A DNA stretch of 64,000 nt from Ylistrum balloti. Its lineage: Eukaryota. Below are positions 53-49,928 of this stretch, in pieces. The notes under the pieces were generated by a model. That model was given only the letters and a program-made list of their open reading frames with translations, was not told where the DNA came from and did not search any database. The DNA lies in assembly GCF_031769215.1 (NCBI RefSeq), contig NW_026782393.1, forward strand, positions 434,001 through 498,000. Reading direction: 5' to 3'. The translations under genes were made by a program, and so were the position numbers. The first letter of the stretch is position 1, and each line of letters begins with the position of its first letter.

Positions 53-1418
53 TGAAGTAAAGTAACTGCTCCAAAATTCATTTCAGAGCGGAGGAAATAC
101 AACCGGTACCGCAGACATCTTGAAATAAGTAAATAAATAAATAAACCAGTACTATTTTTCGCGCGGTGACACATTGAATTGACCTCTGTATATTGACATT
201 CATAATAAAATGTTTCCATTTTTCATTGTAGATCGTAAGCTAGTAAAATGTTAAGATCTTAGGAGAAGATTTAAGAAGACTCTGGAAACGATTTTTCCCA
301 ACGAAACATACTCTAACCTTGTCTTAAGGTTTCCAATACAGAATAAAGTTCCAAATATAACGGAATCATAGTTTTATTGTACAAACTGTGCCAGTGCCAG
401 GAAACAAATTAACTTCATAGTTAAATGGATCATTATTCTGTACTATCGACATGAGGCACATCTTTTGTGGGCCAGAATTAAAGGTAATACGTATGGATGT
501 CACACCGACTCTCTAGAATCTAATAAGCCCACAGGAGGACGACATTCGGTAACATATTTTCAGTAAAAGATATCATGATTATGTTAGTTATATAGTACGA
601 TTTCTTTAGAAAATCATGATTTAAGACGGGACAAAAGACACACAAATGAACACATTTTAATACAATTTTAGAGTAAGATACAGCCAAACGATTGATTAAA
701 CTGCATAACAGCTATGTCGTTCTTTTAGGCTAAGGGCCGATTATTGAAGTCTAGGAAGCAACGGAGAAAATCCTTAGGGATCGGAAGAAACTAAAAAAAA
801 AAAAACTAGACAGGAGGTGCAATAAAAGAATAAAAAGATCTTTCAAATATCAGATAATTTTAGAACAGCGTTAAGCAAATGTGTATATTCTGAGCCGTGC
901 CACTATTCGAATGAATTAAAACGTGACATGCAGGATACGGCAAACTCCAGGGACTACAAGCAGTGCCTATCACTTGCTATATCTAAAATATTGTACAAAA
1001 GACACACAAGTAAATACGATAACCCCTATGTAGCTAAGTAATGATAAAAATATAATAATTCAAGCTTATTCTACCGATAACTGTAATATTAGTAAACATT
1101 CTGATAAGATAATCATTTTGATATACTGGTTATTCGGTTTTAGTTCTAGTTATAATCGTAGTATACTTATGATACTTCCAGCAAACTAATAATCCAAGTT
1201 AATTGATATCCCTAATATATTCAAAGCCCTAGTGCATGGACGTTTGTTTTCCTTATATGGATATGTACATACTCCATGTTTTATTTTCTTGGTACTTGAC
1301 TATTTTGCGCCACATATCTTTTATTGTTTGGTTTTTCTACTTTATTTATTTCTATATTTTCATCATAGTTTATTCCAGATGCAAAGACATGAATAAGTAA
1401 TCATAAAAACAGACTTAC

Positions 1419-1978
1419 GTCTTGTTTGCCATCAACGAACGAGTAGAAAATGTGAATGGTACCACGTCCATCGAACCCAGGCAAAGATTCTTTTTCGAAC
1501 ACCTCGACCATGTGACCTTTTGGCTGCACCCCTCTGACTATTCCGTAGACAACGTTACAAATAGGACATACTGGTTTAACACTGAAGCTATTTTTGGCAC
1601 ATGGCAGACACAGAACATGATGGCACTTGTTTAACTCCGTCCTTTCCTTTAGATCAATCTTTTCTAAACAAACTGGACAGTTTTCATCTGCTGGGTAACT
1701 CTTTACCATCTGTGACTTTACTGAATATCTTTCCATAAACGATTCATCCTCTCGTGTTTCTTTTTTCTCTGTTCTAAAATGGTGATTATGTTTCACTTCC
1801 GGTACAGAGTGAAGTTGTAGGCGCGTGATGACACTTTGAATTGTTTTGACAACACTTCGGTCAGGATGGACGATGTAAAGCATTCGTACACAGGGATTGT
1901 CTGCAGGATTTACGGAAAACTTCTGGATCTGCGTACATAGAAGGTCGATGACAAAATCCCTAGAGGCACCATTTCGTC
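1419..1978 (-). CDS. DTX3/DTX3L-like E3 ligase, coding exon 2: end of macrodomain, RING-HC finger and start of the Deltex C-terminal (DTC) domain
   Basis: Acceptor ttttcacattacag (AG 1980-1979); donor GAC|gtaagt (GT 1418-1417); 560 nt, phase 1 to phase 0. C3HC4 RING CPVCLEKIDLKERTELNKCHHVLCLPCAKNSFSVKPVCPIC, followed by DTC-type YGIVRGVQPKGHM and SLPGFDGRGTIHIFYSFVDGKQ. The rest of the DTC domain was not found in 1-1418, so it presumably lies left of the window. Confidence 0.9.
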
Positions 1979-2139
1979 CTGTAATGTGAAAACATATCAG
2001 ACATATGTATATTCCAGTACGCTTCATCCCACACGCTCGCCAACCCCGACATAATTCCCACATTAATTCAATTAGGGGGTCAAAACAGTTTATTTATTTA
2101 TAGTTTATTTATTTAGGGACTCACTCTCGTCTGACTTTT

Positions 2140-2330
2140 GGAAACGTTGCATTCTCCCTTCACTAACGTAGGTGTCTAGGGTTCGATTTCTAGAAAGGTA
2201 GAGACTATATACCACGTTCGACCACGTGTGTTTTCCACAATTAGTTTCCTCACAAAGTTAGACCCTCTTACGCTTCTACACGGAGCAACAAGAGAGGTTA
2301 ATATAAATTGGCAGTCAAACATCAGTGATT
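2140..2330 (+). mobile_element. Decayed tRNA-derived SINE-like fragment in the DTX-like intron
   Basis: B-box-like gggttcgatttc (~2178-2189) followed by a body resembling mollusc SINE cores (recognised from memory, not searched). Confidence 0.4.
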
Positions 2331-2691
2331 GACTTCTAGGATTCTGAATGGAAAGGAAAACCGTGAGGATGACATGGCTAAATAGCAGTTAGACGTTTCA
2401 AGAAAGGAAGAACCCAGCAACCAAGAACAAATTATTATATACCGGAATATATTCATTCCAGGTTATTTTCGCCCTTGTTCCATTATACACGAATTCGCCT
2501 CATGTTAATTGCGTTCACTAAGAATTATATAAAAAGGTGTAACAAATATTTGACCCTCTCCCCCATCTTGAATTCGCCTTCCCTTTCATGGACGAAAAGG
2601 GCAAAAAATATTAAAAATGCCCCTGTATACAGTGCTCTGCGTTTCATCAGTACAGTCAAACACTTAATTACAGAGTTATAAATTGATTTAC

Positions 2692-3931
2692 CAGTGCCAA
2701 GAAGTGGAATCGCCATAGAATTGAATCCCAGACAGTCGACCCGTTTCAAAAGTCTGCACAAGGCTTTGCTAAAATATTGACACCATGCGTCCTGGTCTAC
2801 TTCCCTTATCTTTGGAATGTTAATATGTGCCACGTTCTTACACTTCAATCTGCCTGCTCCGGGCGTGAAGATGAAATGCCAGGGTTTCAAAATCCCAATC
2901 ATGTTACTTGCTACCAGTTTTTGCTCTTCATATTTTTCACCTCCCTTGTGTGCTAGGTTTTTGGCCACCATACCAAACCCTTGAAGTGATTCATCCTCAC
3001 TCGACACGACAATGTCCACATCCAAATTTGCCATATCGCATTCTGTCGTGTTTACGCACAACTTCCATACAGGTGTCTTGGGCTTTGCCCCGTTATGATC
3101 GTTGGATTCTGCGGATCTGTTCAGAAAATTAACGGAAGCAATACTTCCGCTATGTCTATTTCCGCCTTGTTCATTTTCCTTGGATTTTTTATCTACGCCG
3201 GGTTGTTTGGATTCATACCCAGGAACACGTATTTCAGGACTTTCTGTCGTGCTGTGTTCAGTAACGCTGGCTATATCTTCATCTTCAGTTTCTTTCGGTC
3301 CTTTAAGGTCATACACAGGGACAACCACTCCGCGTTTCCCAGTCTTGATTGGGTCAGTATTTCCGGGTGTATCTTCGACGTAAGCATCTTTCGAGACTTT
3401 GAGATCAATCAACCTACTATTTCCCGACAGGTTCGGTTCAGTTAATCCAGATTTTACTCTGGCTTCGTGTCCTTCCGAATGATTTGGCTCGTGCTTGGTA
3501 TCGGCTTCCGTACTGGTATTACATTCAAACTCATTTTCGTTTGCTTTTTTCTGACCAGTCGTTATACTGCTATCTAGCGTGTTGCATGGTGTTATGCTGG
3601 ATTTGCCTTCAATTTCTGTCTCTTTCGATCTCGTTGGGTCATGCCCAAAAGTAATCTGTACATAATTTCCTATCGGGGTTTTTGCAATATTCTTCGATTT
3701 AACTTCAACTTTGGTTTCATGACCAGGAGTAATTTTTAAACTCCTTCCAAATGTGTTTTCTTTTGTCTTGCTGGAATAATCTTTTGCTGATTGTTGGTTG
3801 CGTCGAACCTGTTCAACACCCGGACATGTTTTGCTGTACCCGTTTTTCTTCTTCACCAATACAGAAAGATATGAAGTTTTTTTGCTCTTTGTTCTCTGCA
3901 CATCCTTTTCTGGCAAATTTTTACTTGCCAT
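2692..3931 (-). CDS. DTX3/DTX3L-like E3 ligase, coding exon 1: long low-complexity N-terminus plus macrodomain
   Basis: ATG 3931 has an in-frame stop just upstream and a tag/cag acceptor at 3960-3955 (5' UTR intron). Macro-like motifs DIVVSSEDESLQGFGMVAKNL, FTPGAGRLKCKNVAHINIP and SMAIPLLGTG. Donor ACT G|gtaaat (phase 1) joins in frame to the exon starting at 1978. Confidence 0.85.
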
Positions 3932-4085
3932 ACTTTTCGGGCGAAAAATTCAAACTGCTAAACAAAAAAGAATACATTTAAATGTGAACTTAGTAATGTA
4001 ATCTACTTTACATTAATTGTATAATTTTAGCATAGTCCGCATTTTTATCTAGTAGAAAACAAAAGAAAGAAATGATTTTAGCTTA

Positions 4086-4610
4086 TACGAGGGCTGATTT
4101 ATAAGTTTTTAGCAATATTTTGGAGAAGCAGGTGTGTCCTTTTTCAGCTCTTCTATTCCTTGACTATTTAAGGCTTTGTATCCAAAGACTGGTGTCACTT
4201 GGTCTGTTAATGTCAAAAAGATAGCATTCTAAAGTAATCTTTTGCATAAGACAGGTTAAGACCTAAGGATATCCATACAGTTATGTTAAAAACACCAAGG
4301 AATAATGCCCTTTTATAAAATACAGTGAAAGAGTGGGTGGCGGAATTTCAGCGTGGCAGGCAGAGCCTTGGGAATGATGCACGTCCTGGAAGGCCTGTCT
4401 CTGTTGCAATCACAAAATTGGCCAATAAAGTCCTTTATAATGGTATGGCTGACAGGTGAGTTACAGCGGGATTTTAAGCCAGAACAGCTGGAATTTCACA
4501 GGAAAGGGGACATTCCATTCTTACGGAAGATCTTGCAATGATAAAACTCTCAGGCCGTTGGACACTAAAACTTCTGACAGCTGATCACAAGCACACCAAA
4601 CGGATTTGCT
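4086..4610 (+). mobile_element. Truncated, decayed mariner transposon (5' TIR and N-terminal transposase)
   Basis: Starts TA+CGAGGGCTGATTTATAAG. Translation with stops NTVKEWVAEFQRGRQSLGNDARPGRP...GISQERGHSILTEDLAMIKLSGRWTLKLLTADHK matches the mariner HTH region and the WVPxxL motif. Confidence 0.85.
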
Positions 4611-6915: not shown

Positions 6916-9900
6916 CGAAAGCGGAATTAATATAAGTAAATTATTGCTAAAACATATATCATAATTTGGACTTTATTCGGTATATAGAAGTGAAATAATA
7001 TTAAGTACTTATATTAGTTCGTCTCGTTAATGTAAAAATGGTAGATGGTATGGCATTGGTACATCTATAATGGTAATAGATGAGGACGATAAAATTCAAA
7101 GGCAAATTGTGTAACATAGTAACATAGAAAATGGTCAATGGGCTTCGTCTATATACTCACTGTCCATATTGATTCATGAAAAGCAAGATCTGCATTGTTA
7201 AGTTGTAATATATTAACGTCACTCAGGTGTGTACGTTGAGTTTTTAAATACAGTTGGAAAGGCATTCCCTTATATATGGTGTTATGTTGATTTAGATCAC
7301 ATTGTAACCAACAAGACTCCTAAGCTCTTCACAGCACGCTAATATACTGAGATGTGTTATTGTTTTCCGTCTCGTAATTTTCGTTGTAAAATAATAATAA
7401 TGTACAGTCTTGATAAAAGGGCGGAACGCCACAAAATTTCCATTTTCCTTACATGTGGTTTTTAAGATATCTTAACATTGTTCCACTCATCTGAATGAAG
7501 AAACATGTCTTGTTTATTAAAACTAGCTTAATTTTTCCGTTATAGAGGGTTACTGATGAATAACATGATATAACCTTCCCAGAATGATTCGAAGTCTTGA
7601 TGTATCGAAGTTTTTTTTGTAGTCCCTTGAGCTTCGAAACATCGAAGTTTGACTCTCTTTGCTCAATAAAATGTAACAAGCAGAGGTTTATCGCTAATAG
7701 TTGTCAGATGCGAAAAAATAACTGTGTTAACTTAATCCGTCTTTTAAAATTGACACAGCATAAGGCATTAGATAATGTTGTAAGAAAATACCATTGGCAA
7801 ATGTGCAAAATCTTAATCAAAGCCTCCAAATAGACGAAAGTAGTGGAAAAGATAAAATTCACCCAGAGACCCTTGAAATAGTACAATGATAATAAGTGTT
7901 TCGGAAGGCTAAATACTTCTGCGTGATCCAGGACAGCCGCAAAGTAAATCTTAACATACGTAAGTAATGTCGTTCAAAAATGAGAACAATTTTTTAAGAA
8001 GGCAAAAACATTTTATTAAATACATAATATACAAAGCCATTTGTATGCAATCATGTCTGCTTCGCTTACTTGACGGAAATATAAGTCACAAGCTAACATA
8101 AATTAGTAGGAAATTTCAATATTCTCATATGTCACTCAATCTCAATGTATTTAAACACTAGTATTTAGGATGAATTTGATGACAATTAGTTCAAAAGTAC
8201 CATCGAAATGGTAGGATAGCCAGGGAGAGTTTTACGTGCTGTTTCTGATATTTTTTTAAATATATTTGATGGGCACTTGTTGATGAACTCTTTAGAACTC
8301 GAGATTAACTTATAGTGTCAATAATTTATTGCTTCTTAGACAAATGAGTGTTTTTGTAACGCTGGGACAAATCTGTGTGACCTGTTGATTCCGCATTAAA
8401 AATCCATTCCAAAGATGAATTAACCCGTTCTGTACTCAAATGCTTTGGTTACACCATCAGTTGAGGCTTAATGATCTGGTTTTTACTGAAATGCAGATTG
8501 TCAGTTTTGCATATTAATATATTAAAAAATGACAATTCAGGAATAGGTGGAGATACTGTAATCCATTACCTGTTATATCTTAAAATAAATGAATTTGTTC
8601 TCTTCAAAGCATTGAAAGGATAGGCATAAAAATTAAAATTGTTACAAAACAATCGTGAACCGTTATTATGTTAAAAATACGCTAAATTGCTATACCACGT
8701 GTGGAATAACATGCATGTTTAAACGACAGTTGGAGTGATTAATTGATGTCTTGGAAGTTGAAATACATCCTCCTGTTGGGGTGAAATCAGACATTATCGA
8801 TACTTATTCCTTAAATTGTTTTCATATTTTCCCATGTTTCACTTGACCTGTCATTGATCGGTATAAAATGATTATATGGAATTTTGAAAAAAATTGATTT
8901 CAATCTAAAAACAAAATACTATAAAGTATTAAATGTTAGTATATGCTTTCATTCGTGGTTTAAGCTCAAGATGTCCTTTCTTTCGTTTATGGTTAAGTTT
9001 TACTAGAGCTGGAATTTCATGAAAAGCGTGGTTATACTTCCTTATGAAATCAATTTGTTATGATATCAGTCGTTGTCATCACAGCAAAGGTGCAGAAGTA
9101 TTAATTTCCTCTGTTGCTTACAGTATACATGTATTGATGCAACGACTGGTTCATCTCAAATTGATTATATTTCTAACCGCTGTTTGCTTCATGTACTTAC
9201 AAGGGAGTAATTATCAGCACGATCACAATGTAGTACATGGCCACAACCGTTCCTTCCTACATGACGAAAACAACCGGTGACTGTGACTATTTATGGCTTA
9301 ATGCCTGAAAACTACAAAAACATTATCCCTGAATAAATGTCACTGATATCTTATAGTCAAAAGTAAAATTCATTGAATTGTGTTATATAATGGTGAATCA
9401 ATATAAAATTATGCTGACAGGGTAGCTGAGAGGGGGCGAAGGACCAATACTGTTAATAGATAAGACTCAAAAGAAATGACAGTAAACTGATAATATAAGA
9501 AGTTTGGAACGAGTTGATGATTAAAGTTAATCTCGAATTAGATCATAAATCAGTTCAATAATCCAGGAGGATTCAGAGCAACAGAGTTTTAGTGCAAACT
9601 GTTTGAATGGAACGCATCTCTATCGTAGTGGATGGTACATACGTTGTAAAATGATAATGTAGATGTATAAATTAGTCTGAAATATTGTTGTTAATCGCCT
9701 TAAGCATTTGGCAATATTCCCTATCATTATCACTATTTTTCAATGCATGTCACGTATTGGAAACTATGACGTCACAATGGAAACAATGGGAGCATTCAAC
9801 TAGTCACAGCTACAAAAGGTCATATCACACGTGTGTCATAGCAAAAAAAAATTAATGGGTGCTAGTAGGCGCTTTTTCATCTAAAATCACTTCATATATA

Positions 9901-10205
9901 ACATACTCTCCAGAGCAAAGGGGATGACGTATCTTTCCGACTGATAAGATAACGACAGCACCACATGTGGTCTCGGCTCCTGAATTAATACAAATCACCC
10001 AAGATACACGTCAAATTGCATACGATTTATTAATTTGAATTTTCATCCGATACTGAAGCGAATCTACAAATCAGACCTAGAACTATCCATGACATACTGA
10101 TGTAAATCTACAACTAAGTTCTAGATCAGTCCTATTAGAATAACTATATATCTCTAGGTTCACCATAAAAGCAGTCAGTTTTCTCCATCTAATCAAGATA
10201 CCAAA

Positions 10206-11459
10206 CTATTTGTTATACACCAATATAAAACCAGCAATCAGTCCGATCACAACCATTTCGGAGGTTACAAACAGAACATTGTCAATGAAAGTAACAATGT
10301 CACCCTTTTCAAGATCCGTTTGGTCATCAATAAAGCGTTTTATATTCTTGTAGTATTTCGGATCATTGTTGAAGTCCTCTGGCACGTTGTCTGTGGGGGC
10401 GTTTGAAACCACTGATTCTATATTACAGATTTCACGATCTTTTATCTTAAATCGCAAAACAATTCGTTTCAACCATCCTGGAAATTGGCTCACACTTGTT
10501 TTTGCATCCCAGCGTAGACTGAAAATTGTTAGTATTATCAGTACACAGCTGAATAACATTGCGACAAGTAGAAAGTAGGAAATTCCCGCCATCGGTTCGG
10601 ATACCTTTGGCATACTATCACTAACGATTGTCATGTATACAGCCAGAGACAGAAACATGGTGATGCTGTAGGAGATTCTCTCACCAGATGCGGCCGGCAG
10701 GAGAAACACAAATGGATGCAGGAAACACAGTATATACACGGGCATTATCATGGAAAAGATGAAGTATACTGATTTTCTTGTCAAAGAAATTTTATACTCG
10801 ATGACACTGCTTTCATCGCTTTCAGGCATGTTTGCTGAGATACTCTCAACATTCCATTCACCATTTGGGCTTAAATACTGCATGTTGTATCGTGGTTGTA
10901 AGAATGAAAGCTGTATTTCTGAAGCAACATAGCCCCATGGTACTATCAATAAAGAACACTTCTGTGAGTCGTTAGGGAAATTTGTCATATCAATTTCACA
11001 AGTTGATCTTATCATCTTTCCTGGGTTTACAAGAATGTAACCGGAATTATAAATTCTTGCATCAAAATCAGAGATATCAAATTTTTCCATGTTTGCCGAA
11101 GAGGATAACAGAAAAATTTTCGGTGCCCAAATCTTCGAAGAATTCACCATTACAGTTTGTATACCGCCATAGTCGTCTGGTTGCCAAGACAACCTGAAAT
11201 CCTTCCACAGCATATTGAGTCCTCCACTCAAAGTTATAGAACTAGCCAGTTCGTCAACATCGAGAATGGAGAAAAGAAAAAGAGTCGTGTTTACTAGAAC
11301 TGTGTCCTCCAAGTTCCTAGCGGGACGTAAATCTCTACTGTAGTTAGAGAAGATATTATCCATCAGTCGAGTCATGTGCTCGAAGGTTCCGACAGCATAC
11401 TCTATCGGGAGGCACTGTAATATCATAACTAGGATAAGGAGGGATTTATTTACCTTCAT
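10206..11459 (-). CDS. nAChR-like Cys-loop ligand-gated ion channel subunit (non-alpha type), single coding exon, 417 aa
   Basis: First ATG is at 11459 (the track start is TTG). Signal peptide; Cys-loop CEIDMTNFPNDSQKC; four TM segments; cation-type SGERISY before M2; no vicinal cysteines in loop C. AATAAA at ~10031-10026. Confidence 0.93.
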   Translation of the reverse strand: MKVNKSLLILVMILQCLPIEYAVGTFEHMTRLMDNIFSNYSRDLRPARNLEDTVLVNTTLFLFSILDVDELASSITLSGGLNMLWKDFRLSWQPDDYGGIQTVMVNSSKIWAPKIFLLSSSANMEKFDISDFDARIYNSGYILVNPGKMIRSTCEIDMTNFPNDSQKCSLLIVPWGYVASEIQLSFLQPRYNMQYLSPNGEWNVESISANMPESDESSVIEYKISLTRKSVYFIFSMIMPVYILCFLHPFVFLLPAASGERISYSITMFLSLAVYMTIVSDSMPKVSEPMAGISYFLLVAMLFSCVLIILTIFSLRWDAKTSVSQFPGWLKRIVLRFKIKDREICNIESVVSNAPTDNVPEDFNNDPKYYKNIKRFIDDQTDLEKGDIVTFIDNVLFVTSEMVVIGLIAGFILVYNK

Positions 11460-12941
11460 TCTCAACTGTTTTAAGCTTACTACCTTAAGATGCCACTCTG
11501 AATAGGATTTTCGATATCATCCGACAACGAGAGTCACACTTGGTTCACTTCATATAGGCTCCTAAAAATGGATGAAATGCATTGAATAATATTTAATTTA
11601 ATTTAAGAATAGATATAGAATATTTTTTCAATTATATCACTATGATGACCGTAAAGTTTCCCCGTAATTTGCATCAACTTGCATCTTTTGAAACCTCATG
11701 TTACGAGTTTGTCCGTCAATTGACATTTTTCAGGAAAATTGTGATGATTGGAACAAGCCCTTAAATATCGGGAACTGAAACATGTACATACCCAAGGTTT
11801 GGGATGTTGGTAAGTAATTTCACGATCACAACTAATTTCATATCACACAAGAAAACAACTAAATGGTAATAACGGTCATTCTATAACAAAATGAATAATA
11901 TCTGAACTGGAGCAATATTACTAACCATTTTAAACGGTATCAAGATGAAGATTTATTCAAATATGGACTGTTACTGACCTTGCGGTAACAAAAAGGTTCG
12001 GCTGATCCTACTTGTCTACAGGCCATAACGAACGATAAGTTACAACCCTATCGAATGAGAAATCAGTTTCGGCTTGATCGCTATCTTTATGGGTTGCCAT
12101 GGAAGCAACAATAATTATTATCAAATAGGATTTCATATCAAATTAATTACTTTCACATTCAGAATCATGAGAATAATGTCAAAAAAATATTCAGAATCAC
12201 AGAGGGACTATTGTTAAAATACACTCTGAATTAGACAGCAGAAATCATGATAAGATTATTTCCTGTAGGAAAAGATCGAGATGATCGGCTAATGTAGAAG
12301 AGCCTACGAAATACGTTTTTTTTTTTTTTTTGTCATAGAGTTTCCATGAGGGTACCAGTAATCTTGAATTTGTAGTGCTGAGTGCAATTTTAAACGACTA
12401 CTTTGTTTAATTTATATTGCTCAATGGAAATTTGAAGAATGATGAATAAAACAGAAAAGGAAGGAAATGTAGAATGGACATATCGCTTACGGTCTTATAT
12501 GCGCATGATTTCTTTTTCTTTTATTCAATATAGCGTAGTAAGTATGCTAATTGTAAGCTCTTAGCTAAAATTCATTGTGATATTTTCTTAGCTTTGGAGT
12601 GTTTTAATGTGGAATATATTTTACTGGTTGTTTCGGGATACGACTAATACCATTATTATGGGGGCACACAAGTTAAACCTCCCGTATGTTGTTCAGTGAT
12701 TTAGCCACCAACTTCTTCAATGAAATCCTTCCTTAAAATCTTAAAATGATAAAATAAACATGACAATCTTATCCTAAAAAAGAGACGACGTCGAAGTTGC
12801 TGTTTGAACAATATTACGATGTCACCGCAACATTAAAATGAGTTATGATAATCTGCTCCATGTTTTCAAATAGACCAATATGTTGCCAATCACTTGCATG
12901 CTATTGGATGACTTATCTGCTCACCTACTCAGTATGATAAA

Positions 12942-14210
12942 TCATCTGTAAAACCTAATAGCAAATCCACTAATTAATCCAGTAACTACTATTTCCGTGG
13001 TCACGAATAAAGCATTGTCAATGAAATCGACAACGTCTTTCTTTTGTAGATCCGTCTTTTCATTCACAAAATGGTTTCCTTTGTCCTCAGATGCAATGTT
13101 GACATCGGGTTCTTCAGACATGTTTGAGCTAGAGTTATTTGCGATAGAATTTTTGTGAGCGAGTGATTTATTACAAAATATTTTCTTTTCTTTTTTCTTC
13201 AATCGCAATACGATTATTTTCAACCATTTTGGAAATTGCTTCGTATCAGTAACTGCATCCCAGCGTAGACTGAAAATTGTTAGTATTATCAGCACACAGC
13301 TGAGTAACATTGCGACAAGTAGAAAGTAGGAAATTCCCGCCATCGGTTCGGATACCTTTGGCATACTATCACTAACGATTGTCATGTATACAGCCAGAGA
13401 CAGAAACATAGTGATGCTGTAGGAGATTCTCTCACCAGATGCGGCCGGCAGAAGAAACACAAATGGATGCAGGAAACACAGTATATACACGGGCACTGCC
13501 ATTGACATCATGAAATATGCTGACCTTCTTGTCAAAATGATAGTATAAACGAGAGCACTGGTTCCGTTTTCATGTTCAGGAAACTTTCCCGGTGAGATGC
13601 TATCAACATTCCATTCACCATTTGGGCTTAAGAAACCGAGATCGAAGCTTGGGTCAAGATAGGAAAGTTTTATTTCTTTAGTGTAGTATCCCCAAGCTAT
13701 TAGAGACATATGACATGTCTGTGAGTCGGTAGGGAAGTTCGTCATATCAACAACACACGAACACTTAAACACCTTTCCTGGACTCACAAGCATTACACCA
13801 TGATTGTTTATTCTGATGTCAAAATCATTCATACTCAACCTTTCTATGTCTGCTGTAGAAGAGAACTGGAAAATTTTCGGTGTCCAAACCTTAGATGAAT
13901 TCACCATTATGCTCGGTATGCCACCGTAGCTGTCTGGTTGCCACATTAGCCGAATATCTGTCCACATCACATTTATTCCTCCACTCAGAATAAGAGACCC
14001 AGCCAATTCGTCAACGTCATGAACGGTGAGAATATAAAATGATACGTTAACAACAACTGAGTCCTCCCATTTCTTGGTGGGACGTATCTCTGTTCTATAG
14101 TTAGAGAACATGTCGTCCATCAGTCGAGTCATGTTTGCTATGTTACCAGTCACGTGTAGTATCACGTGACAATAAGATATTAATAGAATGATGATATCTG
14201 CTCCTTTCAT
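12942..14210 (-). CDS. nAChR-like Cys-loop ligand-gated ion channel subunit (non-alpha type), tandem paralog, 422 aa
   Basis: Signal peptide; Cys-loop CVVDMTNFPTDSQTC; M1-M4; SGERISY; no loop-C CC motif; colinear with the 10206-11459 paralog. Confidence 0.93.
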   Translation of the reverse strand: MKGADIIILLISYCHVILHVTGNIANMTRLMDDMFSNYRTEIRPTKKWEDSVVVNVSFYILTVHDVDELAGSLILSGGINVMWTDIRLMWQPDSYGGIPSIMVNSSKVWTPKIFQFSSTADIERLSMNDFDIRINNHGVMLVSPGKVFKCSCVVDMTNFPTDSQTCHMSLIAWGYYTKEIKLSYLDPSFDLGFLSPNGEWNVDSISPGKFPEHENGTSALVYTIILTRRSAYFMMSMAVPVYILCFLHPFVFLLPAASGERISYSITMFLSLAVYMTIVSDSMPKVSEPMAGISYFLLVAMLLSCVLIILTIFSLRWDAVTDTKQFPKWLKIIVLRLKKKEKKIFCNKSLAHKNSIANNSSSNMSEEPDVNIASEDKGNHFVNEKTDLQKKDVVDFIDNALFVTTEIVVTGLISGFAIRFYR

Positions 14211-14613
14211 TCTGAGAGGCTGTTACGTCTAACAAGATGTCAATACTTTGTGGCGGATTTACGACGACAGAATAGACCCACCTACCTCTAAAAAGAAAAC
14301 AAAAGTAATGTTTTAAGTCCCTGCGTTATTGAAACGATCTCAGCTGTAAGTCGCCTGATGTATGTCTTCAACTTTACTGACAAATCCTGTATAGACGAAA
14401 TAATTGTTATTTGAAAATTATTCTTATTTTGCTTTGCAACGTTTAAGTGTTATAAAATGTTTTATGGTTTTTAAATATATTTATGGAAAGAGAACCCAAA
14501 CAACAAGTAAAATACCGATAATGCAACAGAATGTTCATTCCAATTCAATGAAATTACTTGGCAATAAAATATCAATAAACTAAACTAAACTAATTCAATG
14601 AAACCAGGGCAAA

Positions 14614-14769
14614 ATATGAACAAAGGAATGATATTCTTGGAGACTCCTGAAAAAGTACAAGGAGAATGAGAGCAGGTGTTCCGGGCGAGTAAGTGTCTTC
14701 AGCTTCTATGTTGACACCGGCTATGTAAATCAAAGTAAGCAATGTCTAACTCAAATGAGAACAAGGTAA
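14614..14769 (-). repeat. Dispersed repeat, probably a Penelope-like element terminal fragment (copy 2)
   Basis: Similar to 5166-5333. Confidence 0.55.
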
Positions 14770-17389
14770 TGAAGGTGTCGGCTAGGTATTAATCGTCTCG
14801 AAAATTTTGATGTATGAATGTATTTTTATTTGAAAAATTATTATTTTTACGATAGTATCCATCATTAAAGTAAGCTACTCCTTAAAACATTAACACATAG
14901 AGGCTACTATTTAGTAAATAGAAATATGCAGTATATTCGAACTAAAATGTTGATACACAAAAGAAATCGTTAAACTTAATTAAGTGGTCGGCACTTTATG
15001 ATCTGTAAACAGTCTGTTGTTTATTACGTTCTATCTACCAAATTGTGGCTAATATTGTTTTCTTGTAAAACGTGTGTAATTTAAAAAAAACTTTTCAAAA
15101 ACTGCACAAATGATGAAAATTGTGTAATCAGTTGTTCTGTATTAGGAATAGTGATAAGAGGCCAATTACAGGACATTAAGGTATCCCAGATCAGGTTTTG
15201 TCCCATGCTCATCTGTTATCTTAGTATATATTTAATATTATTCAAAGTATCAAATAAAGGACAAAAATAAATAAACGAATAAAATAAATTTAGTTTATAA
15301 TTTAAAAAATCATGTATTGTATCACCAAACTACAATATAATACAATGTACATATAAATTGTATTCACACTGTCGATCACCCTTGCTTAACAGCTATGTCC
15401 AGATTCTATCTCACCCTGTTAAATATATAGCGGAGTAGCTTTTTCTATATCAATATCCATTATGTAAGACTAAATTTGTAGTTAGTTTACATGAGTATTT
15501 TTTATATTCGAATGAAATGAAGTCGCTTACCTTCTGATTATCTGCTGGTTTTTGCAAGAATTCCTTTCGGCATCATTTCAAAATGCTTCTTTAAACAGAT
15601 ATGTCCACCAATCAGAGGCGACCAATAATCAATTAGCTTTACAAACTGTGTCTACCACACGTTGCTATCATCACTTTAAAACTGATATCGACTAATTTTA
15701 TTTGCTTTATACGACTGTCTGTTAGTATGATATCGGGATCACTTCTAATGTGGTTGGACGAAAGATTCTACAAATAACTCACAAGTGAATGGCACCTTTT
15801 CATAATTTAGAGTGAGATACAGTAGAGCCAAACAATGAATTAAACTAAGGACCTGAATTCTGAAGCCTAAGAAGCGACTAATGAAAAATGTGATCAAAAG
15901 GTAAATCCAAATCTAGACAAGGAGATGTAGCAGACCCATAATTGAATAAATAAATATGTCCTTTCGGGATCAAAATGGGTGTAGTGGATTAAATTTGTAA
16001 CATTTCTTAGCACCATCCTTGTAAAGAACAAACGTATAACATTTTGCAGGTCGGTAGTTTTACTTTAGAATACTTAAGCTTGCTCGTTCACTAATATTCA
16101 TTTTTGTTTTACACAACCATTAAGTTTTTTGAAGAACACAGAACTATTGTGTTCATAGACATGGTGTGATTCAACAAGAAGCCTTTCATCACCGAGACGT
16201 TGAATAACAATTATAGTGTTGTGTGTAGACACACCTTGAATTACAAATAGTATGTTGCAGAAAGTGCCATTTAATTTCTATTGCAAACAACACGTTTGCC
16301 TGTCAAGATGACAAATGGGGCGTTTTCTTCTTTGTTTAAATATGTCTGCTTCTGTAGTCCAAAAGGTATCCAGTTGCAATCATACACTTATAGTTCAATT
16401 GTTTGTATAACCCTGTGGTAATGGAACATTTTGAGTAGGACTTTACAGAATCAAAGTTATCACATCAGAGTAAACACCACACAGTGACAACCATGGGTAT
16501 AATTCTCCATTCAGTCTCTAATATGGTATAATGAGGCATACCGGAACAAATTGTTTGAGATCAAAGTCAGCCCCTTTAGTTGCATACAATTTACATCAAT
16601 GAAACTAAGACCTTACATGGGGCTCTTGAATCAAATCATATTATGTTACCTTAATGTAGTATTGACATTGTTTCACGACAAATTCGAAAACAAATATATT
16701 TATATGTCGACGTTTGAATAAAGACAATGGCGTCAAGAACACATTAAAACAAAGGCTATTTGATATGTCAATTCGAATGTCCCTTCGTCAGGCCCACTTA
16801 TAACTTCTATCAGTGTACAATGCTGAATGATGGGCGTTATAACAATGTGGTTAAATCGGCATTTCGATTTAATGTGATTATTTAGCATATACATTACAGT
16901 TTACACTTATATGTTTATTTCCCATATGTAAATTTCCCAATCCTAGTAGTAATAAACATGTTACAGGTAATTCATATTCAAGTAATTATTCCAAATACCA
17001 CATAGATAAATAGTAAAAAGTATTGTCACTTACATCCGTATGCTATGACGTCACCTCACCTAAATAAAAAAAATCGGGACTTTACACTCAGAATTACGTA
17101 CTTTGAGAATTGCTTGGTCTGACAATAACGTATCCCTTGGTGCTTAATGTAGTCCCATTGACAAATGAAAAGCAATTCAAATTATAATGACACTATGAAT
17201 TATCTAAAGGGAAAAAGGTTAGGTCCAGATCTTCGACTAATATAGATATGGTGTCATTTCCATTAGTGTTAACAGGTATTATAGGTTATCGACCTTGCAA
17301 TGTAAACTGAAATACAATTACTTGTTTGTTCAGCAATAAATTCTTGTGTTAAACGCATATTCACCAGATCAATGTGGAGCAATAGTCAT

Positions 17390-19089: not shown

Positions 19090-20280
19090 GTTTATGACCT
19101 ATGAGGAAATCTTGTACTTAACATCTCCTTCAGGTACAATGACTAACGCGAAGAGATGAAAACCATGTTCCGAACAAATTTTGAAAATCTACTTTGGAAA
19201 ACTAAATATATCAAAGGAAATGTCAGCGAAAACCGATAGTGTTCTACCAGTGACATTTTAGACGTTGGCAATCATTCAGGGACAATTACTCTCAGCGCTG
19301 GATTGGTTGTTTCCACCAATTCCCAATTGTCATAAGAACCTTAGAATATCAGTGTAACAGAGACCATTATTTATTTCAATGCCTCCGCTAGGAATCGAAT
19401 CCAGGACCCCTGACTTACTATTTATTAGCCGAGTGGAATATTGCGGTTAGTATTTTACCAAGGTTACATCAGGGATAACACATGATATCGGGAATTCCTG
19501 AAAGATTAGGAGACTTTCCTCATTTCTGTTATTATGTACTCTAGATAACGGAGATGTTTGGTTCGGAACAATTCGACGTGTGATGAAATGCCTCTAATTG
19601 TTCTGAAGCAAGGTCCGTCCTGACAGCAACAAATATAGATGCTGTCTATGATCAGGCCGTGAGTTGTCATTTTTAGTAACACTATTGAAGACGGAAAATT
19701 TCATTCCTGAATTGTATATTCAAAACTGCAGCAAAATCTAAAGGGGAAACATTTTGTCATGCACGCGATCATGGGCTACAATAGAAGCTTGCCGAATCAG
19801 AAAGGGGTGATTTATTATTTCATTCTGCTGGCCTTCCCATGTATGTTTTCTTTCTTCAATGTTCAAATGCTCTGTATATTGCAAATAGTTTTGAATTTCC
19901 TTCTATGCTAACACGTTCCTAATCAATCCACTCTCGTTGGCAGCTTTCCAATTCTCCAAATTAGATCCACTACACGTGGAAACTGGGAAGATTGTTAGGA
20001 GTCGTCCTATTGGCACGAGAGAAAGAAATAGTGCTCACAATGTCGAGTCTGGCGATTTCGTCCTGTATGCCCGTCAATGTTCCATAGTCGCGGCAGAATT
20101 CAGCACTTTTGGAGGATGTTTTAGACTAGTTCCAGAATACCATTTACAAAATTTCAATGAGACAAAATACTGTGATATAGAGTAGGTTCTCAAAATCTGA
20201 GCGAGTCCCAATGGAAAAGTGCAGTCCAGGACTCAATTATCATTCCAAAATATCCCTGATAATTCTAGAATTCCTTTGAG
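19090..20280 (+). pseudogene. Heavily decayed third nAChR-like paralog, in the opposite orientation
   Basis: Colinear remnants in different frames: ILDVGNHSGTITLSAGL (19255), LDNGDVW...C (19541-19591), IMGYNRSL..IYYFHSAGLPMYVFFL (19768-19857), ISFYANTFL (19895), IVLTMSSL (20028). Spacing matches the intact paralogs. Confidence 0.7.
19380..19420 (-). mobile_element. tRNA-derived SINE head fragment inserted in the pseudogene
   Basis: Reverse complement contains B-box-like GGATTCGATTCC within agtaagtcaggggtcctggattcgattcctagcggaggca. Confidence 0.5.
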
Positions 20281-35810: not shown

Positions 35811-37740
35811 ACTCACCTTGGGATAAGGGGAAATAGATCAAAGTCTGTAAAATCCATCTCCTTGTGTAGGAATGTCAAGATAAGTTCAAATTTTCGTCTG
35901 AAGCATCCTTAAGTGAAGAAAATAAATTTTTGTATAAATGGTTGGTCTCTGCACCCGGGGTAGGGACTACTGACAAACCTATTGGAATGAAGTCCAACAG
36001 ATTACTGACATTATCATTATCGGTAGAAACCTCACCAACAGCAATGTAAATGTCAGACTCTGTACTGGAAAATCTCTGATAACAAAGCTCAGTAAAAAAA
36101 CCTTCAAGTGGCTTAAACCTTCAGCAATGGTCAGGACAAAGTGGGCCATACAGATGAAAATAACTACAGAAGAGTCATTGAAGAAGGAACCCGCTAAGAA
36201 CATCAGCAACATCAAATATGCAATACACAGCACAGTAGCTATACTTCATTTAATGCCTGTTACATCCTTATAAGGGTAAAAACTATTAAGGATGTCACAA
36301 AAATATACATATGAATTTAATTTTCTTTTTTTTTTTTAAAGACTTAAAATGACTATAATGTATAAAAACACTCTGAGAAAATGATATAAACATTCTATTT
36401 TCCAATAGTATGTTACAAAACTAAGACTTTCTGTTAATTACTAAAATTAAAAGTCACTGCAACCATTTTTTATTGATATCTAAAAAATAAAGAATTTATA
36501 TTAGACAGGAAATCGATAGATGACGAAAGATGAAGGAGGATCTTGGACTGAATATGGATTCAGAATTTGCGAAGCTGCTGCTTGACTGGTTAGCTTAACG
36601 TTAGCCCTATAATTATAACGTATCACCCTGTCATTGATTATAATCCAATATCCAGTGTTTGACGCGTGAATATGTTATGAACAACACTACTAAAAGTGTT
36701 ATCTGATAAATGTTGAATGAAAATAGGTGTGTTATTAGCTTGAATTCACAAAGATTGATTGTTAAAAATTATATATTACAACACTATAGAATCATTTACT
36801 GCAAACAAGAATTAGCAGAAAGGCGCAAAAGCAAGTGTCATACATAAGACATGTGCGTTTGTTTACACTTTCCTCGTAATCCATTTTTTCTTTGCGGCGG
36901 AAGTAAATGACTTCGTGACATGACAAGTCATGTGACCCACTAAGCTTTCTTCGTAATAAACCAAGCGTGAACATGTTTATAAACAATAGTCAAGACAAAC
37001 AATGGTTTATATATATACAAAAACAACAAATTTGACGTTATGCGTGCGTGTTTTATTATTCATTAGCCGAATTCTCCATTTCCTGATGTTGAAATCTAAG
37101 GTAATAGCTGCTTTAAAAACATCAGTGCATGTTATACATAACTTGTTCTCTATATTTGAAGCACAGAGATTGCCTGATCAAAGGTGACAGGAAAAATTTC
37201 TCTATCATCCAATACACATTGCCATTAGTTTTTCAATATACAGTCCCTAGACAGATGTTGTATGGTGTCCATTTATAAGGTGTGAAACAGAAGATATAAC
37301 GACACCGGATCAATAAAAAGGATGTTTTTTTTTCATTTTTTCATTACATAGATCCATTTATATGAATATAGATATAATATCATAAAAGCCTTGATATCGC
37401 TTATACAAAATGCTTTTTAAAATATTTCTTTATTCCTAATTGGTTTACAATGTATCACATTACAGGTAGCCATAACACTAATATAAGATATTGGGGCCTC
37501 GTTAGTACAGAAACTACCGAAACATAGAATTTATTGTTGAGGTCTAACAGTGGTGATATATTGGCACTAACAAGTGAGCAAACTTAAGGCTCCTGGTTCC
37601 AGGCTAAATATATTCAATAACAGACATTTGATATTGATATATACCCACATAAGGTGATTTTTATTGTTTAAACCAAAAAAAAAATGAACATTGAATGATG
37701 TTGTATATTGTTAAAAATGTAATGTTGTATACTGTAAAAG

Positions 37741-38003
37741 TTGTAATTTTTGAGGGACTCTTGTTTTTCATTGTTATGCTCTATACTGCAAAAGTTGTAA
37801 TTTTTGAGGGACTCTTGTTTTTCATTGTTATACTCTATACTGCAAAAGTTGTAATTTTTGAGGGACTCTTGTTTTTCATTGTTATGCTCTATACTGCAAA
37901 AGTTGTAATTTTTGAGGGACTCTTGTTTTTCATTGTTATACTCTATACTGCAAAAGTTGTAATTTTTGAGGGACTCTTGTTTTTCATTGTTATGCTCTAT
38001 ACT
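37741..38003. repeat. 54-bp minisatellite, ~5 copies
   Basis: Unit ttgtaatttttgagggactcttgtttttcattgttat[g/a]ctctatactgcaaaag; the two variants alternate. Confidence 0.95.
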
Positions 38004-38734
38004 GCAAAAGTTGTAATTTTCAAGGAGAATTGTTTTTCACCAATATGTTGTATACTGTAAAAGTTGTATTTTTCATCAATTTCGATTCAATAATTCAAAA
38101 ATTCAATAAAAACAGGTACATGTAGTATGAATTTAAACATAGCACATTTTCTAAATAGGAGATTGTTTTCATCTCATAAACCATGCTTATATTGAAATCT
38201 CCCAATATTTGCAAAGTTGTAACCAGAGCCATATCAAAGTGTTACAAAATGGCTGTTAGAAAAATTTGGTAGCCATTTTATACTGGGCAATTTTTCCATT
38301 GATTTATTCCAGTTTTTTGTGAAAACAGGTAGAATTTCAACCATCGAAAAAGAATGTATATATTTATATTTATCACATAATCTGAATGTTATCCAGTGAA
38401 CTTGCCCATTTAACATTTTTGCATATCCAGTATATGCCACTTATGTAGTATACCCTGGAACATTTTTCATTGGCTGTGTCAGTCAGAAATGTGGTGTGAT
38501 GTCATAATATGGACTATGATATGATGTTATGACTAGTATATGGCTGATCAAAATTGCTGCCTCAGTTGTCATAATGTAACTTTTCTGAGTTTTGTGATAA
38601 AAAGAATTTGGCTCTTTAAAATTGTTTTCGTTTTTTGTGAGATTTTATGAAACTCATCTTGCTTAAAGGTTGGCAAAAATAAAAACTTCAAAGACTTCTT
38701 TCATAAAATCTCAAGAAATGAAAACTCATTATGA

Positions 38735-40274: not shown

Positions 40275-41049
40275 GATACATAGTCCTATCTCAAATATTA
40301 TTTTCGTCATTATGGTTTGAAATACACATTGTATAACACTTTTGTATAAACGCATATGTGTGGTATTTGTTCAATTTTCATCATCACCAACACGTTAAGA
40401 ATTGTCACTTTGATTTCTGTGACTGAATACTTCTTCAGACTTGTTACTGTAGTCATTGTCATAGAAGTGTGTAGGAGGAACACAAAAGATTTCCATTCAT
40501 ATTGAGTGACATTGACATCTATGCTGCAACCTTGTAGCCTATATAAAAAGGACAGTTTTTGAGTCATTAATATACAGAATAAATCCAACAATCTAAATTC
40601 AAGTGTCCAGCTGAATAATTTCAATCTCGAAATTCAAGGGATCGTGAAAAATAATTAGACTTATCCAAAGTTCAAAGGTTGACTTATCCTGAATTTGATT
40701 ACTGATGGATGGAATAATGGCTACGGTAGAACCCTACACCATGGTACAGTGTAATTCAATCTGTTATTTGAAAGGGCAGTAAATAAACAGAAACAAATAA
40801 GTTTCTATTTTCTCGTTTTATTGTTTCTTCATCCAAATGACAAAACATGTAACAGCAATATCAACAGCATATGAACTCACCGTCCTGCATATGTGTACAC
40901 TCAAAGCACAAATAGATCATATATTTTACGAAATGACGATAAAGCGAAATTAAAACTATGAATGAAAAACGCACTTTGTAGTTAACGTAATTCAATCTCG
41001 CATCAAGTTTTCTTTGTAAACCTTTTTCCAGCAACTGATCCAGCAATCG

Positions 41050-49860: not shown

Positions 49861-49928
49861 AAATGAAATATGTATCATTTGATAAGAAATATTTGTGAAA
49901 TGTAATCGAGTACATAAACATGTTATAA

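What the first reader, a model, noticed from the sequence alone, without database searches (positions are those of the whole stretch)
10503..13495. Gene conversion has homogenised only the pore (M1-M3) of two otherwise divergent Cys-loop receptors
Seen: 10503-10744 and 13254-13495 (offset 2751) differ at only 4 of 242 nt, 3 synonymous and one F/L. The flanking extracellular domains and M3-M4 loops differ at many amino acids and most third positions. Near-identity at synonymous sites cannot be explained by protein-level purifying selection, so recent ectopic gene conversion is the simplest explanation. Inference: the cluster diversifies its ligand sensors while keeping an identical, co-assembly-compatible channel module, a variable-sensor/constant-pore design.
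Basis: partly seen in the sequence, partly recalled or inferred. Interest (0 to 1): 0.85.

Follow-up and report, generated by a model that had tools for sequence, protein, structure and literature searches.

The report
Gene conversion homogenises scallop receptor pores
Two neighbouring, otherwise very different nicotinic-type receptor genes of a scallop carry an almost identical 242-base channel-forming segment because one gene's segment was recently copied into the other (gene conversion); related genes in three other scallop genera show the same kind of copying, and it is a well-known type of process found here in a new gene family.

Summary
Window 10503-10744 and 13254-13495 differ at 4 of 242 nt (3 synonymous, one F/L). 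They lie inside two intact, intronless, minus-strand Cys-loop (nAChR-like) genes: A at 10206-11459 and B at 12942-14210. Synonymous divergence is 0.05 in the tract against about 1.0 on both sides.

It is not an assembly artefact. In four independent individuals from two studies, the tract assembles as its own 242-nt contig. Its depth is 1.6-2.1x the flanks in three of the runs. All four unique flanks join it.

It is not nucleotide-level constraint. Between scallop species the same segment is as diverged at silent sites (pS 0.5-0.77) as the rest of the gene.

Paralog pairs in Mizuhopecten, Pecten and Argopecten show the same M1-M3 dip. In Pecten and Argopecten the ECD tree groups genes by orthologue and the TM tree by species; each data set rejects the other topology (AU p<0.001).

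The best explanation is recent, recurrent interlocus gene conversion confined to the M1-M3 module.

A neutral, homology-limited process is enough to explain the pattern.

This is a new member of a known kind. The closest precedent is TLR1/TLR6.

The parts
10206..11459 (-). Gene A: an intronless Cys-loop (nAChR-like, non-alpha) subunit of 417 aa from the ATG at 11459. The mechanical ORF starts at a TTG at 11465.
   Evidence: The ORF is listed. Pfam finds Neur_chan_LBD (1.5e-44) and Neur_chan_memb (8.9e-15). The Cys-loop CEIDMTNFPNDSQKC is read directly from the sequence. It aligns to solved nAChR alpha1 over residues 23-335 (E=3e-46). By position it corresponds to the Mizuhopecten 419-aa gene next to the Macro-RING-DTC gene.
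12942..14210 (-). Gene B: an intronless Cys-loop (nAChR-like) subunit of 422 aa, lying upstream of A in tandem.
   Evidence: The ORF is listed. Pfam finds LBD (6.6e-41) and memb (1.1e-15). It is 57% identical to A overall. By position it corresponds to the Mizuhopecten 428-aa gene.
10503..10744 (-). The converted tract in gene A: 242 nt encoding the second half of M1, M2, the M2-M3 linker, M3 and three further residues.
   Evidence: It is 98.3% identical to 13254-13495, while the rest of the gene is 66% identical. Tract pS is 0.052. In four individuals it assembles as a separate 242-nt contig with exactly these ends.
13254..13495 (-). The converted tract in gene B.
   Evidence: The evidence is the same as for the A copy. 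The unique B-side contigs end at 13283 and start at 13466, so they overlap the tract by 30 nt (k-1) in all four runs.
10542..10701 (-). The span holding the four sites that differ between the two copies: 10542, 10553 (the F/L site), 10659 and 10701, paired with 13293, 13304, 13410 and 13452.
   Evidence: The tract contigs of four individuals carry different combinations of the A and B states: TAGA, CGAA, CGGG and CGGG, against TAGG for window A and CGAA for window B. The differences therefore behave as segregating variants, not as fixed paralog-specific sites.
11460..12941 (.). The intergenic spacer between B and A. It shows no A/B similarity outside the coding regions.
   Evidence: blastn of each gene against the window finds similarity only inside the CDS. 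One 2571-nt contig of run X1 spans 10715-13283, which confirms the tandem arrangement in another individual.

Best explanation
Two tandem, intronless nAChR-like genes lie 2.75 kb apart and have been separate long enough for silent sites to reach dS of about 1. They recently exchanged a 242-nt internal segment by interlocus (non-allelic) gene conversion. This is homologous repair in which one paralog served as template for the other, without crossover.

The tract is confined to M1(half)-M2-M3. Purifying selection on the channel keeps that segment the most similar stretch of DNA between paralogs, so it is the only part that can pair. Conversions there also change almost nothing in the protein and so are tolerated.

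The process is recurrent in this receptor subfamily across scallops. One by-product is that lineage-specific pore substitutions end up in both paralogs.

What is shown: the mosaic, its reality in independent individuals, the absence of nucleotide-level constraint, and recurrence with tree incongruence in other scallops. What is inferred: the repair mechanism, the homology-limited reason for the tract's location, and the absence of any need for adaptive maintenance.
For: - The dS contrast is 0.054 in the tract against 0.94 and 1.14 in the flanks, and the tract is flanked by divergent sequence on both sides. That pattern needs a non-crossover patch, not unequal crossing-over.
- Independent individuals support it. 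In all four runs the tract is a 242-nt contig, and all four unique flanks overlap it by k-1. Its depth is 1.6-2.1x the flanks in X1, X4 and X5. One contig spans from A's 5' part through the spacer to B's 3' part.
- Between species, TM silent divergence is 0.5-0.77, similar to the ECD. The segment is therefore not protected at the DNA level. There is no Rfam element in it.
- The same dip appears in other scallop paralog pairs (TM pS against ECD pS / post-M3 pS). Mizuhopecten: 0.189 against 0.547/0.450. Pecten: 0.171 against 0.627-0.684/0.544-0.558. Argopecten: 0.317 against 0.639/0.735. A Pecten paralog 350 kb away also shows it, with TM pS 0.32 and a 73-nt exact run.
- The best segments cover nearly the same codons, 229-336.
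- The ECD tree groups orthologues with support 100 and 98, while the TM tree groups by species. In AU tests TM rejects the orthologue topology (dlnL 42.2, p=0.0003; third positions only, p=0.002). ECD rejects the species topology (dlnL 54.9, p=0.0006).
- A and B share six derived residues in the otherwise near-invariant module: H in FLHPF, S in SYSITM, I/S/S in MTIVSDSMP, and S in IFSLR.
- GC3 is higher in the TM tract than in the flanks in all 11 genes, which is compatible with GC-biased conversion.
Against: - For the window pair itself, tree incongruence cannot be shown. The ECD also pairs A with B, weakly (support 57-62). The case for this pair rests on the dS contrast and the reads.
- The donor and the direction of transfer are unknown.
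- Logan contigs merge variants, so I could not phase the tract copies. I cannot prove that the same polymorphisms sit in both genes.
- One run (X3) shows the tract contig at about 1x depth, not 2x.
- Higher GC3 could also reflect the codon composition of membrane helices.
Confidence: 0.85

Rival explanations
1. Selection-maintained concerted evolution. Conversions of the pore module are favoured and retained because A and B must share an identical channel module, for example as partners in one heteropentamer, while their ligand-binding domains diversify.
For: - The same module is homogenised repeatedly in four scallop genera, with similar boundaries.
- Six derived pore-module residues are shared by A and B.
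- The module contains M2, which lines the pore, and M1 and M3, which contact neighbouring subunits. It excludes the peripheral M4. This assignment rests on general pLGIC knowledge and the alignment.
- The same argument was made for TLR1/TLR6 (PMC2077338).
Against: - There are no expression, co-expression or assembly data, and no RNA run was found.
- ECD dN/dS is about 0.36 and gives no gene-wide sign of diversifying selection.
- The module is near-invariant as protein across the whole subfamily even without conversion, so conversion adds little at the protein level.
- The location is predicted equally well by homology-dependence: unconverted TM identity is 75-82% against 53-67% for the ECD.
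- From general knowledge, nAChR assembly depends strongly on ECD interfaces, which are divergent here.
Confidence: 0.2
2. Assembly artefact. The tract was collapsed or copied between the two genes by the assembler, or A and B are mis-joined haplotypes.
For: The window comes from a scaffold-level assembly with gaps (141 N). Near-identical repeats of 242 nt are a classic place for errors.
Against: - Four other individuals from two studies give the same graph. All four unique flanks overlap the tract by 30 nt.
- Tract depth is 1.6-2.1x the flanks in three runs.
- A 2571-nt contig links A to B across the spacer.
- A and B differ at pS of about 0.5 outside the tract, far too much for alleles.
Confidence: 0.02
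3. DNA- or RNA-level constraint. The tract holds an embedded functional element, such as an RNA structure, a regulatory element or extreme codon preference, that keeps silent sites identical without any transfer.
For: The tract has somewhat higher GC3 than the flanks.
Against: - Silent divergence of the same codons between species is 0.5-0.77, as high as in the ECD.
- There is no Rfam match at E<=0.1.
- The TM tree groups by species, not by gene.
Confidence: 0.02
4. A third-party donor. Both A and B (or one of them) received the tract from another paralog elsewhere in the genome, rather than from each other.
For: - Conversion between paralogs 350 kb apart is seen in Pecten.
- Scallops hold dozens of related genes.
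- The direction of transfer is unknown.
Against: - No other protein in the searched collection carries the window's pore signature; the next best is 84% identical.
- The only other receptor remnant in the window (19091-19371) has no detectable TM part.
- This would still be gene conversion, so it is a variant of the main explanation.
Confidence: 0.1

Closest known systems
TLR1/TLR6 domain-restricted gene conversion in mammals (Kruithof et al. 2007, PMC2077338)
   Same: Both involve tandem paralogs whose ligand-recognising N-terminal part groups by orthologue, while a conserved C-terminal functional part groups by species. Both show independent conversion events in several lineages covering nearly the same region, and conversion limits divergence of one module only.
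   Different: The protein family here is a pentameric ligand-gated channel, not a TLR. The tract is far shorter, 220-310 nt against about 900 nt. The genes are intronless, probably retrogene-derived, invertebrate genes. Boundaries vary by about 12 codons. The window's event is so recent that the remaining differences look polymorphic.
Expanded, intronless, tandemly arrayed nAChR genes of molluscs (Jiao et al. 2019, PMC6896357)
   Same: A and B fit that description. They are intronless LBD+TM subunits in a tandem array in a bivalve, with pseudogene relics nearby.
   Different: That paper explains the arrays by retroposition plus stepwise, lineage-specific tandem duplication. It does not mention gene conversion or concerted evolution: both terms have 0 occurrences. 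The present data show that part of each gene evolves in concert, which can mimic lineage-specific duplication in trees.
Cephalopod chemotactile receptors (nAChR-derived sensory channels; reviewed in PMC11526382)
   Same: Both are nAChR-like subunits of molluscs with divergent ligand-binding domains on a conserved cation-channel scaffold. They form homo- or heteropentamers, and the ligand pocket varies among paralogs.
   Different: I found no evidence that the scallop genes are sensory. Membership was not tested. No gene conversion is reported for the cephalopod receptors in the literature I searched.
Conversion-spread adaptive substitutions in ion-transport paralogs (newt Nav channels, bioRxiv 10.1101/2021.03.25.437018; frog ATP1A1, bioRxiv 10.1101/2020.08.04.234435)
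   Same: Non-allelic conversion copies substitutions between paralogs of a membrane-transport protein, so derived residues appear in several paralogs (titles and abstracts). Here six derived pore-module residues are shared by A and B.
   Different: In those cases the copied residues have a demonstrated adaptive role in toxin resistance. Here no function is known for the shared residues.

Membership tests
Cys-loop / pentameric ligand-gated ion channel, nAChR-like subunit | A Neur_chan_LBD extracellular domain followed by the Neur_chan_memb transmembrane region | tested here: met
   Both Pfam domains score above their curated cut-offs in A and B.
Cys-loop / pentameric ligand-gated ion channel, nAChR-like subunit | The signature Cys-loop: two cysteines separated by 13 residues, with an FP.D core | tested here: met
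   A has CEIDMTNFPNDSQKC and B has CVVDMTNFPTDSQTC (translations, alignment).
Cys-loop / pentameric ligand-gated ion channel, nAChR-like subunit | M1-M3 helices with a cation-type M2 (-1' Glu, 9' Leu, outer-ring acidic residue), plus a C-terminal M4 | tested here: met
   The alignment to solved muscle alpha1 places SGERISYSITMFLSLAVYMTIVSD on [24 protein letters not shown]. M4 is inferred from the hydrophobic C-terminal FIDNVLFVTSEMVVIGLIAGFILVY.
alpha-type, acetylcholine-binding nAChR subunit | A vicinal Cys-Cys at the tip of loop C and a full aromatic box | tested here: not met
   There is no CC in the loop C region of A or B. The loop A tyrosine position aligns to Leu. The source names such as 'alpha-2-like' on relatives are automatic. 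The ligand is unknown.
Interlocus (ectopic) gene conversion tract | An internal segment with significantly lower silent divergence than both flanks | tested here: met
   dS is 0.054 against 0.94 and 1.14. Fisher p=9.6e-7. Permutation gives 12 of 100,000 and 0 of 20,000.
Interlocus (ectopic) gene conversion tract | Low divergence is not due to constraint on the DNA: the same segment diverges normally between orthologues or species | tested here: met
   TM pS is 0.5-0.77 between species and 0.05-0.32 within species.
Interlocus (ectopic) gene conversion tract | Tree incongruence between the tract and its flanks | tested here: inconclusive
   This is met for the Pecten/Argopecten genes (AU p=0.0003 and 0.0006). 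For the window pair itself the ECD also weakly pairs A with B (support 57-62), so no incongruence can be shown.
Interlocus (ectopic) gene conversion tract | Both copies are real in the genome, not an assembly artefact | tested here: met
   Four individuals give a 242-nt tract contig. It is at about 2x depth in three of them, and all four unique flanks join it.
Interlocus (ectopic) gene conversion tract | Donor, recipient and direction identified; shared polymorphism phased to both loci | not testable with these tools
   Only merged short-read contigs were available. Phased long reads are needed.
Recurrent domain-restricted conversion of the TLR1/TLR6 type | Independent events in several lineages over the same region | tested here: met
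   Best segments cover A-codons 241-321 (window), 233-336 (Mizuhopecten), 230-333 (Pecten) and 229-320 (Argopecten). The TM tree groups by species.
Recurrent domain-restricted conversion of the TLR1/TLR6 type | Homogenisation is maintained by selection for shared partners or co-assembly | not testable with these tools
   No expression or functional data were available.

The most novel reading that the evidence does not exclude
In the greatly expanded bivalve nAChR-like family, the M1-M3 channel module evolves in concert across linked paralogs, and selection keeps it that way. New pore substitutions then sweep through several subunits at once while ligand-binding domains diverge freely. That would be a modular 'one pore, many sensors' receptor array maintained by gene conversion. 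It would also mean that many 'lineage-specific expansions' inferred from full-length trees are partly conversion artefacts.
Probability: 0.2. Interest if true: 0.7.

Novelty: new member of a known kind. Interest (0 to 1): 0.5.

Why it matters
- It gives a clean, recurrent example of domain-restricted concerted evolution in a ligand-gated ion channel family. I found no report of this in the searched literature.
- It is a practical warning. Trees of the massively expanded mollusc nAChR genes that include the transmembrane region will pull paralogs of one species together. That overstates lineage-specific duplication and misdates it. The ECD and TM regions should be analysed separately.
- It offers a natural experiment for channel biology. 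Two subunits with the same pore module but ECDs with a nonsynonymous difference (pN) of about 0.27 can be compared directly. Six lineage-specific pore-module residues, four of them in or next to M2, can be tested for effects on conductance or gating.
- It bears on whether conversion tracts are set by homology alone or by selection.

Tried and rejected
- A third paralog in the window as donor. tblastn and blastn with A and B find nothing else at E<0.01. At relaxed thresholds, and with Mizuhopecten P0010 as query, only an N-terminal relic appears at 19091-19371, with stops and no TM part. It cannot be the donor.
- An embedded RNA element. There is no Rfam match at E<=0.1 in 10100-14300.
- Other genes with the same pore signature. 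A region-limited protein search on residues 236-325 returned only A and B above 84% identity. I saw no other proteins of this species in the collection, so this says little about the rest of its genome.
- Expression. No RNA run holds the stretch, so expression is untested.
- My first ECD distances and tree for the Pecten gene P0013 were inflated, because two frameshifts put about 90 codons out of frame. I rebuilt the codon map frame by frame and repeated the tree and AU test, and the result became stronger.
- ECD third positions alone cannot discriminate the two topologies because they are saturated.
- A decayed receptor fragment in Argopecten (L003, about 7378-7875) is 87-88% identical to its neighbours over M2-M3 and about 66% beyond. 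I judged this too weak to count as conversion into a dead copy.
- A word search of earlier scan notes for conversion in Cys-loop genes found nothing.
- I did not identify the species. It is a pectinid distinct from Mizuhopecten yessoensis, Pecten maximus, Argopecten irradians and Ylistrum balloti.
Full report
**What is there**

The window carries two intact, intronless genes on the minus strand. Gene A is at 10206-11459 (417 aa from the ATG; the mechanical ORF starts at a TTG at 11465). Gene B is at 12942-14210 (422 aa).

Both genes have the Pfam ligand-binding and transmembrane domains of neurotransmitter-gated channels, well above the curated cut-offs. Both have a canonical Cys-loop. Both align to solved nicotinic receptor subunits over about 310 residues (E=3e-46).

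That alignment places the cation-channel M2 pattern SGER...L...D on SGEK...L...E of muscle alpha1. It also shows that loop C lacks the vicinal cysteines of alpha subunits. The two genes are therefore nAChR-like, non-alpha, orphan subunits.

The closest relatives are all from scallops: Mizuhopecten, Pecten, Argopecten and Ylistrum. None is more than 59% identical, so the source is another pectinid.

The locus is syntenic with Mizuhopecten. There the order is RPL7, an inverted receptor (P0010), a 428-aa receptor (P0004), a 419-aa receptor (P0003) and a Macro-RING-DTC gene. In the window the matching order is B, A and the DTC-like ORFs at 1401-3931. A decayed relic of the inverted third gene lies at 19091-19371.

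At offset 2751, window 10503-10744 and 13254-13495 differ at four of 242 positions. Mismatches at 10502 and 10745 bound the tract. Three differences are synonymous and one changes F to L.

| Region | pS | pN | dS |
|---|---|---|---|
| Tract (80 codons) | 0.052 | 0.005 | 0.054 |
| Extracellular domain | 0.535 | 0.271 | 0.94 |
| After M3 | 0.587 | 0.350 | 1.14 |

The rest of the gene is 66% identical at the nucleotide level, and there is no similarity outside the coding regions.

I then restricted the test to codons that encode the same amino acid in both genes. There, 3 of 73 differ in the tract against 47 of 151 outside it (Fisher p=9.6e-7). A maximal-segment permutation reaches the observed score in 12 of 100,000 shuffles of silent codons, and in none of 20,000 shuffles of all sites.

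The tract starts at the conserved M1 proline and ends three residues after M3.

**It is not an assembly artefact**

Five public runs hold the stretch. I laid the contigs of four of them, four samples from two studies, on 10100-14300.

- In every run the tract is a separate contig of exactly 242 nt with the window's boundaries.
- The unique flank contigs end at 10532 and 13283 and begin at 10715 and 13466, so each overlaps the tract by 30 nt (k-1).
- In run X1 a single 2571-nt contig runs from A's 5' part through the spacer into B's 3' part.
- The tract contig has 1.6-2.1 times the depth of the flanks in three runs and about 1 times in the fourth (X3).

This is the graph expected if both genes carry the same tract in tandem.

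The four sites that differ between A and B in the window appear in other combinations in the tract contigs. Window A reads TAGG and window B reads CGAA. The four individuals read TAGA, CGAA, CGGG and CGGG. The differences therefore behave as segregating variants rather than fixed paralog-specific sites.

One caveat applies. Logan contigs keep one path per bubble, so the copies are not phased.

Other variants in the runs include an in-frame 6-nt deletion in A's M3-M4 loop and a mix of synonymous and conservative changes. These are consistent with live genes.

**It is not constraint on the DNA**

I built codon maps for nine, and later eleven, genes from the window and four fetched loci.

Between species, silent divergence in the same 80 codons is 0.5-0.77, as high as in the ECD. 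The region has no Rfam match. Silent sites of this segment are therefore free to change, and the identity within the genome needs a transfer of sequence.

Because divergent sequence flanks the tract on both sides, a single unequal crossover cannot produce it. A non-crossover conversion patch, or an equivalent double exchange, can.

**The same thing happens in other scallops**

Within-species paralog pairs show the same dip.

| Pair | TM pS | ECD pS | Post-M3 pS |
|---|---|---|---|
| Mizuhopecten P0003 / P0004 | 0.189 | 0.547 | 0.450 |
| Pecten maximus P0005 / P0013 | 0.171 | 0.627-0.684 | 0.544-0.558 |
| Argopecten irradians P0006 / P0007 | 0.317 | 0.639 | 0.735 |

A Pecten paralog about 350 kb away (P0009) has TM pS 0.32 to P0005, with a 73-nt exact run, against 0.55-0.76 to genes of other species.

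The best high-identity segments are as follows.

| Pair | A-codons | Length (nt) | Identity |
|---|---|---|---|
| Window A / B | 241-321 | 242 | 98.3% |
| Mizuhopecten | 233-336 | 310 | 92.3% |
| Pecten | 230-333 | 310 | 94.8% |
| Argopecten | 229-320 | 275 | 92.4% |

The region is the same in all four, the boundaries vary by about a dozen codons, and the window's event is the youngest.

Maximum-likelihood trees disagree in the expected way. The ECD groups (Pecten b, Argopecten b) with support 100 and (Pecten a, Argopecten a/c) with support 98. The TM tract groups genes by species.

AU tests confirm the conflict.

- The TM data reject the orthologue topology (delta lnL 42.2, p=0.0003; third positions only, p=0.002).
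- The ECD data reject the species topology (delta lnL 54.9, p=0.0006, after I corrected the reading frame of the frameshifted Pecten gene).

For the window pair itself the ECD also weakly pairs A with B (support 57-62). Whether the pair duplicated after the split from Mizuhopecten, or was homogenised over its whole length earlier, is not resolved.

**Why the tract sits where it does**

The M1-M3 module is the most conserved protein segment of the whole subfamily. In unconverted comparisons its nucleotide identity is 75-82%, against 53-67% for the ECD.

Homologous repair needs similar DNA. Conversions that extend into divergent flanks are both mechanically disfavoured and more likely to be harmful. 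That alone predicts tracts confined to this module with roughly recurring ends.

GC3 is higher in the tract than in the flanks in all eleven genes. This is compatible with GC-biased conversion, but it could also reflect the codon composition of membrane helices.

A and B share six residues that differ from every other family member at otherwise near-invariant positions. Four of them lie in or next to M2. Conversion has therefore placed lineage-specific pore changes in both subunits.

Gene conversion is supported. The 'variable-sensor/constant-pore design' and 'co-assembly' readings are not tested.

- ECD dN/dS is about 0.36, with no gene-wide sign of diversifying selection.
- No RNA data were found.
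- The neutral, homology-limited model explains the pattern.
- From general knowledge, nAChR assembly depends strongly on extracellular interfaces, which are divergent here.

I give the adaptive reading about 0.2.

**Comparison with what is known**

The phenomenon matches the TLR1/TLR6 case closely. There, independent conversions in nine mammals homogenise the same C-terminal region while the ligand-binding part groups by orthologue (PMC2077338).

The genes themselves fit the expanded, intronless, tandem nAChR genes of molluscs described by Jiao et al. (PMC6896357). That paper explains the arrays by retroposition and stepwise lineage-specific duplication and does not mention conversion.

Searches combining gene conversion or concerted evolution with Cys-loop, nAChR, scallop, mollusc or chemotactile receptors found no prior description. 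The library is limited to open-access papers and preprints.

I therefore rate this as a new member of a known kind. It is solid and recurrent, and it carries a useful methodological warning for trees of this family, but it is not mechanistically new.

**Limits**

- The species was not identified.
- The tract copies were not phased.
- The donor and direction of transfer are unknown.
- The pseudogene status of Pecten P0013 rests on two frameshifts that could be assembly errors.
- Other paralogs of this genome could not be examined.
- The N stretches in the window were left untouched.

Noticed in passing
window 19091-19371 (+): A decayed relic of a third, inverted receptor paralog. Mizuhopecten P0010 matches two collinear pieces (E=1e-4) with in-frame stops, and no TM part is detectable. 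Its position between gene B and RPL7 matches that of P0010 in Mizuhopecten.
   Followed up: partly
window 11651-11791, 12215-12355, 12638-12778: Three short stretches of the B-A spacer have 3-10 times the contig depth of their surroundings in all four runs, with many loose ends. One surrounds a poly-T run at about 12316-12333. They are probably dispersed repeats.
   Followed up: no
window 10309: An in-frame 6-nt deletion polymorphism in gene A's M3-M4 loop (codon 384) appears in runs X3 and X5. Several non-synonymous variants occur in A's ECD, at 10962 (Q/H) and 10971 (N/K). The variant at 10971 is seen in all four runs.
   Followed up: partly
L002 (Pecten maximus LR736855.1) 2936-4132, minus strand: Receptor P0013 needs two frameshifts to be read, with about 90 ECD codons in another frame. 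Its M1-M3 is nevertheless intact and 95% identical to its neighbour P0005. It is either a pseudogene whose pore module is kept fresh by conversion, or the frameshifts are assembly indel errors.
   Followed up: partly
L003 (Argopecten irradians CM084278.1) about 7378-7875, minus strand: A truncated receptor relic with no ECD, a frameshift and a stop. Its M2 to M3 stretch is 87-88% identical to neighbouring genes, while the rest is about 66% identical.
   Followed up: partly
L005 vs L002 (Pecten maximus, about 350 kb apart): P0009 and P0005 share a 73-nt exact run and TM pS of 0.32, although their ECDs are only 57% identical at the nucleotide level. Conversion apparently reaches beyond immediate neighbours.
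   Followed up: partly
L004 (Mizuhopecten) 10001-16344; protein P0078: An annotated 306-aa product joins the TM half of P0010 to a hAT-family dimerisation domain (PF05699). This is a possible transposon capture or an annotation chimera.
   Followed up: no
window 37664-38079, 40982-42380, 46560-48460, 49788-50737: Four large tandem-repeat arrays with periods of about 54 nt, 29/59/118 nt, 64 nt and 65 nt. They are unrelated to the receptor genes.
   Followed up: no
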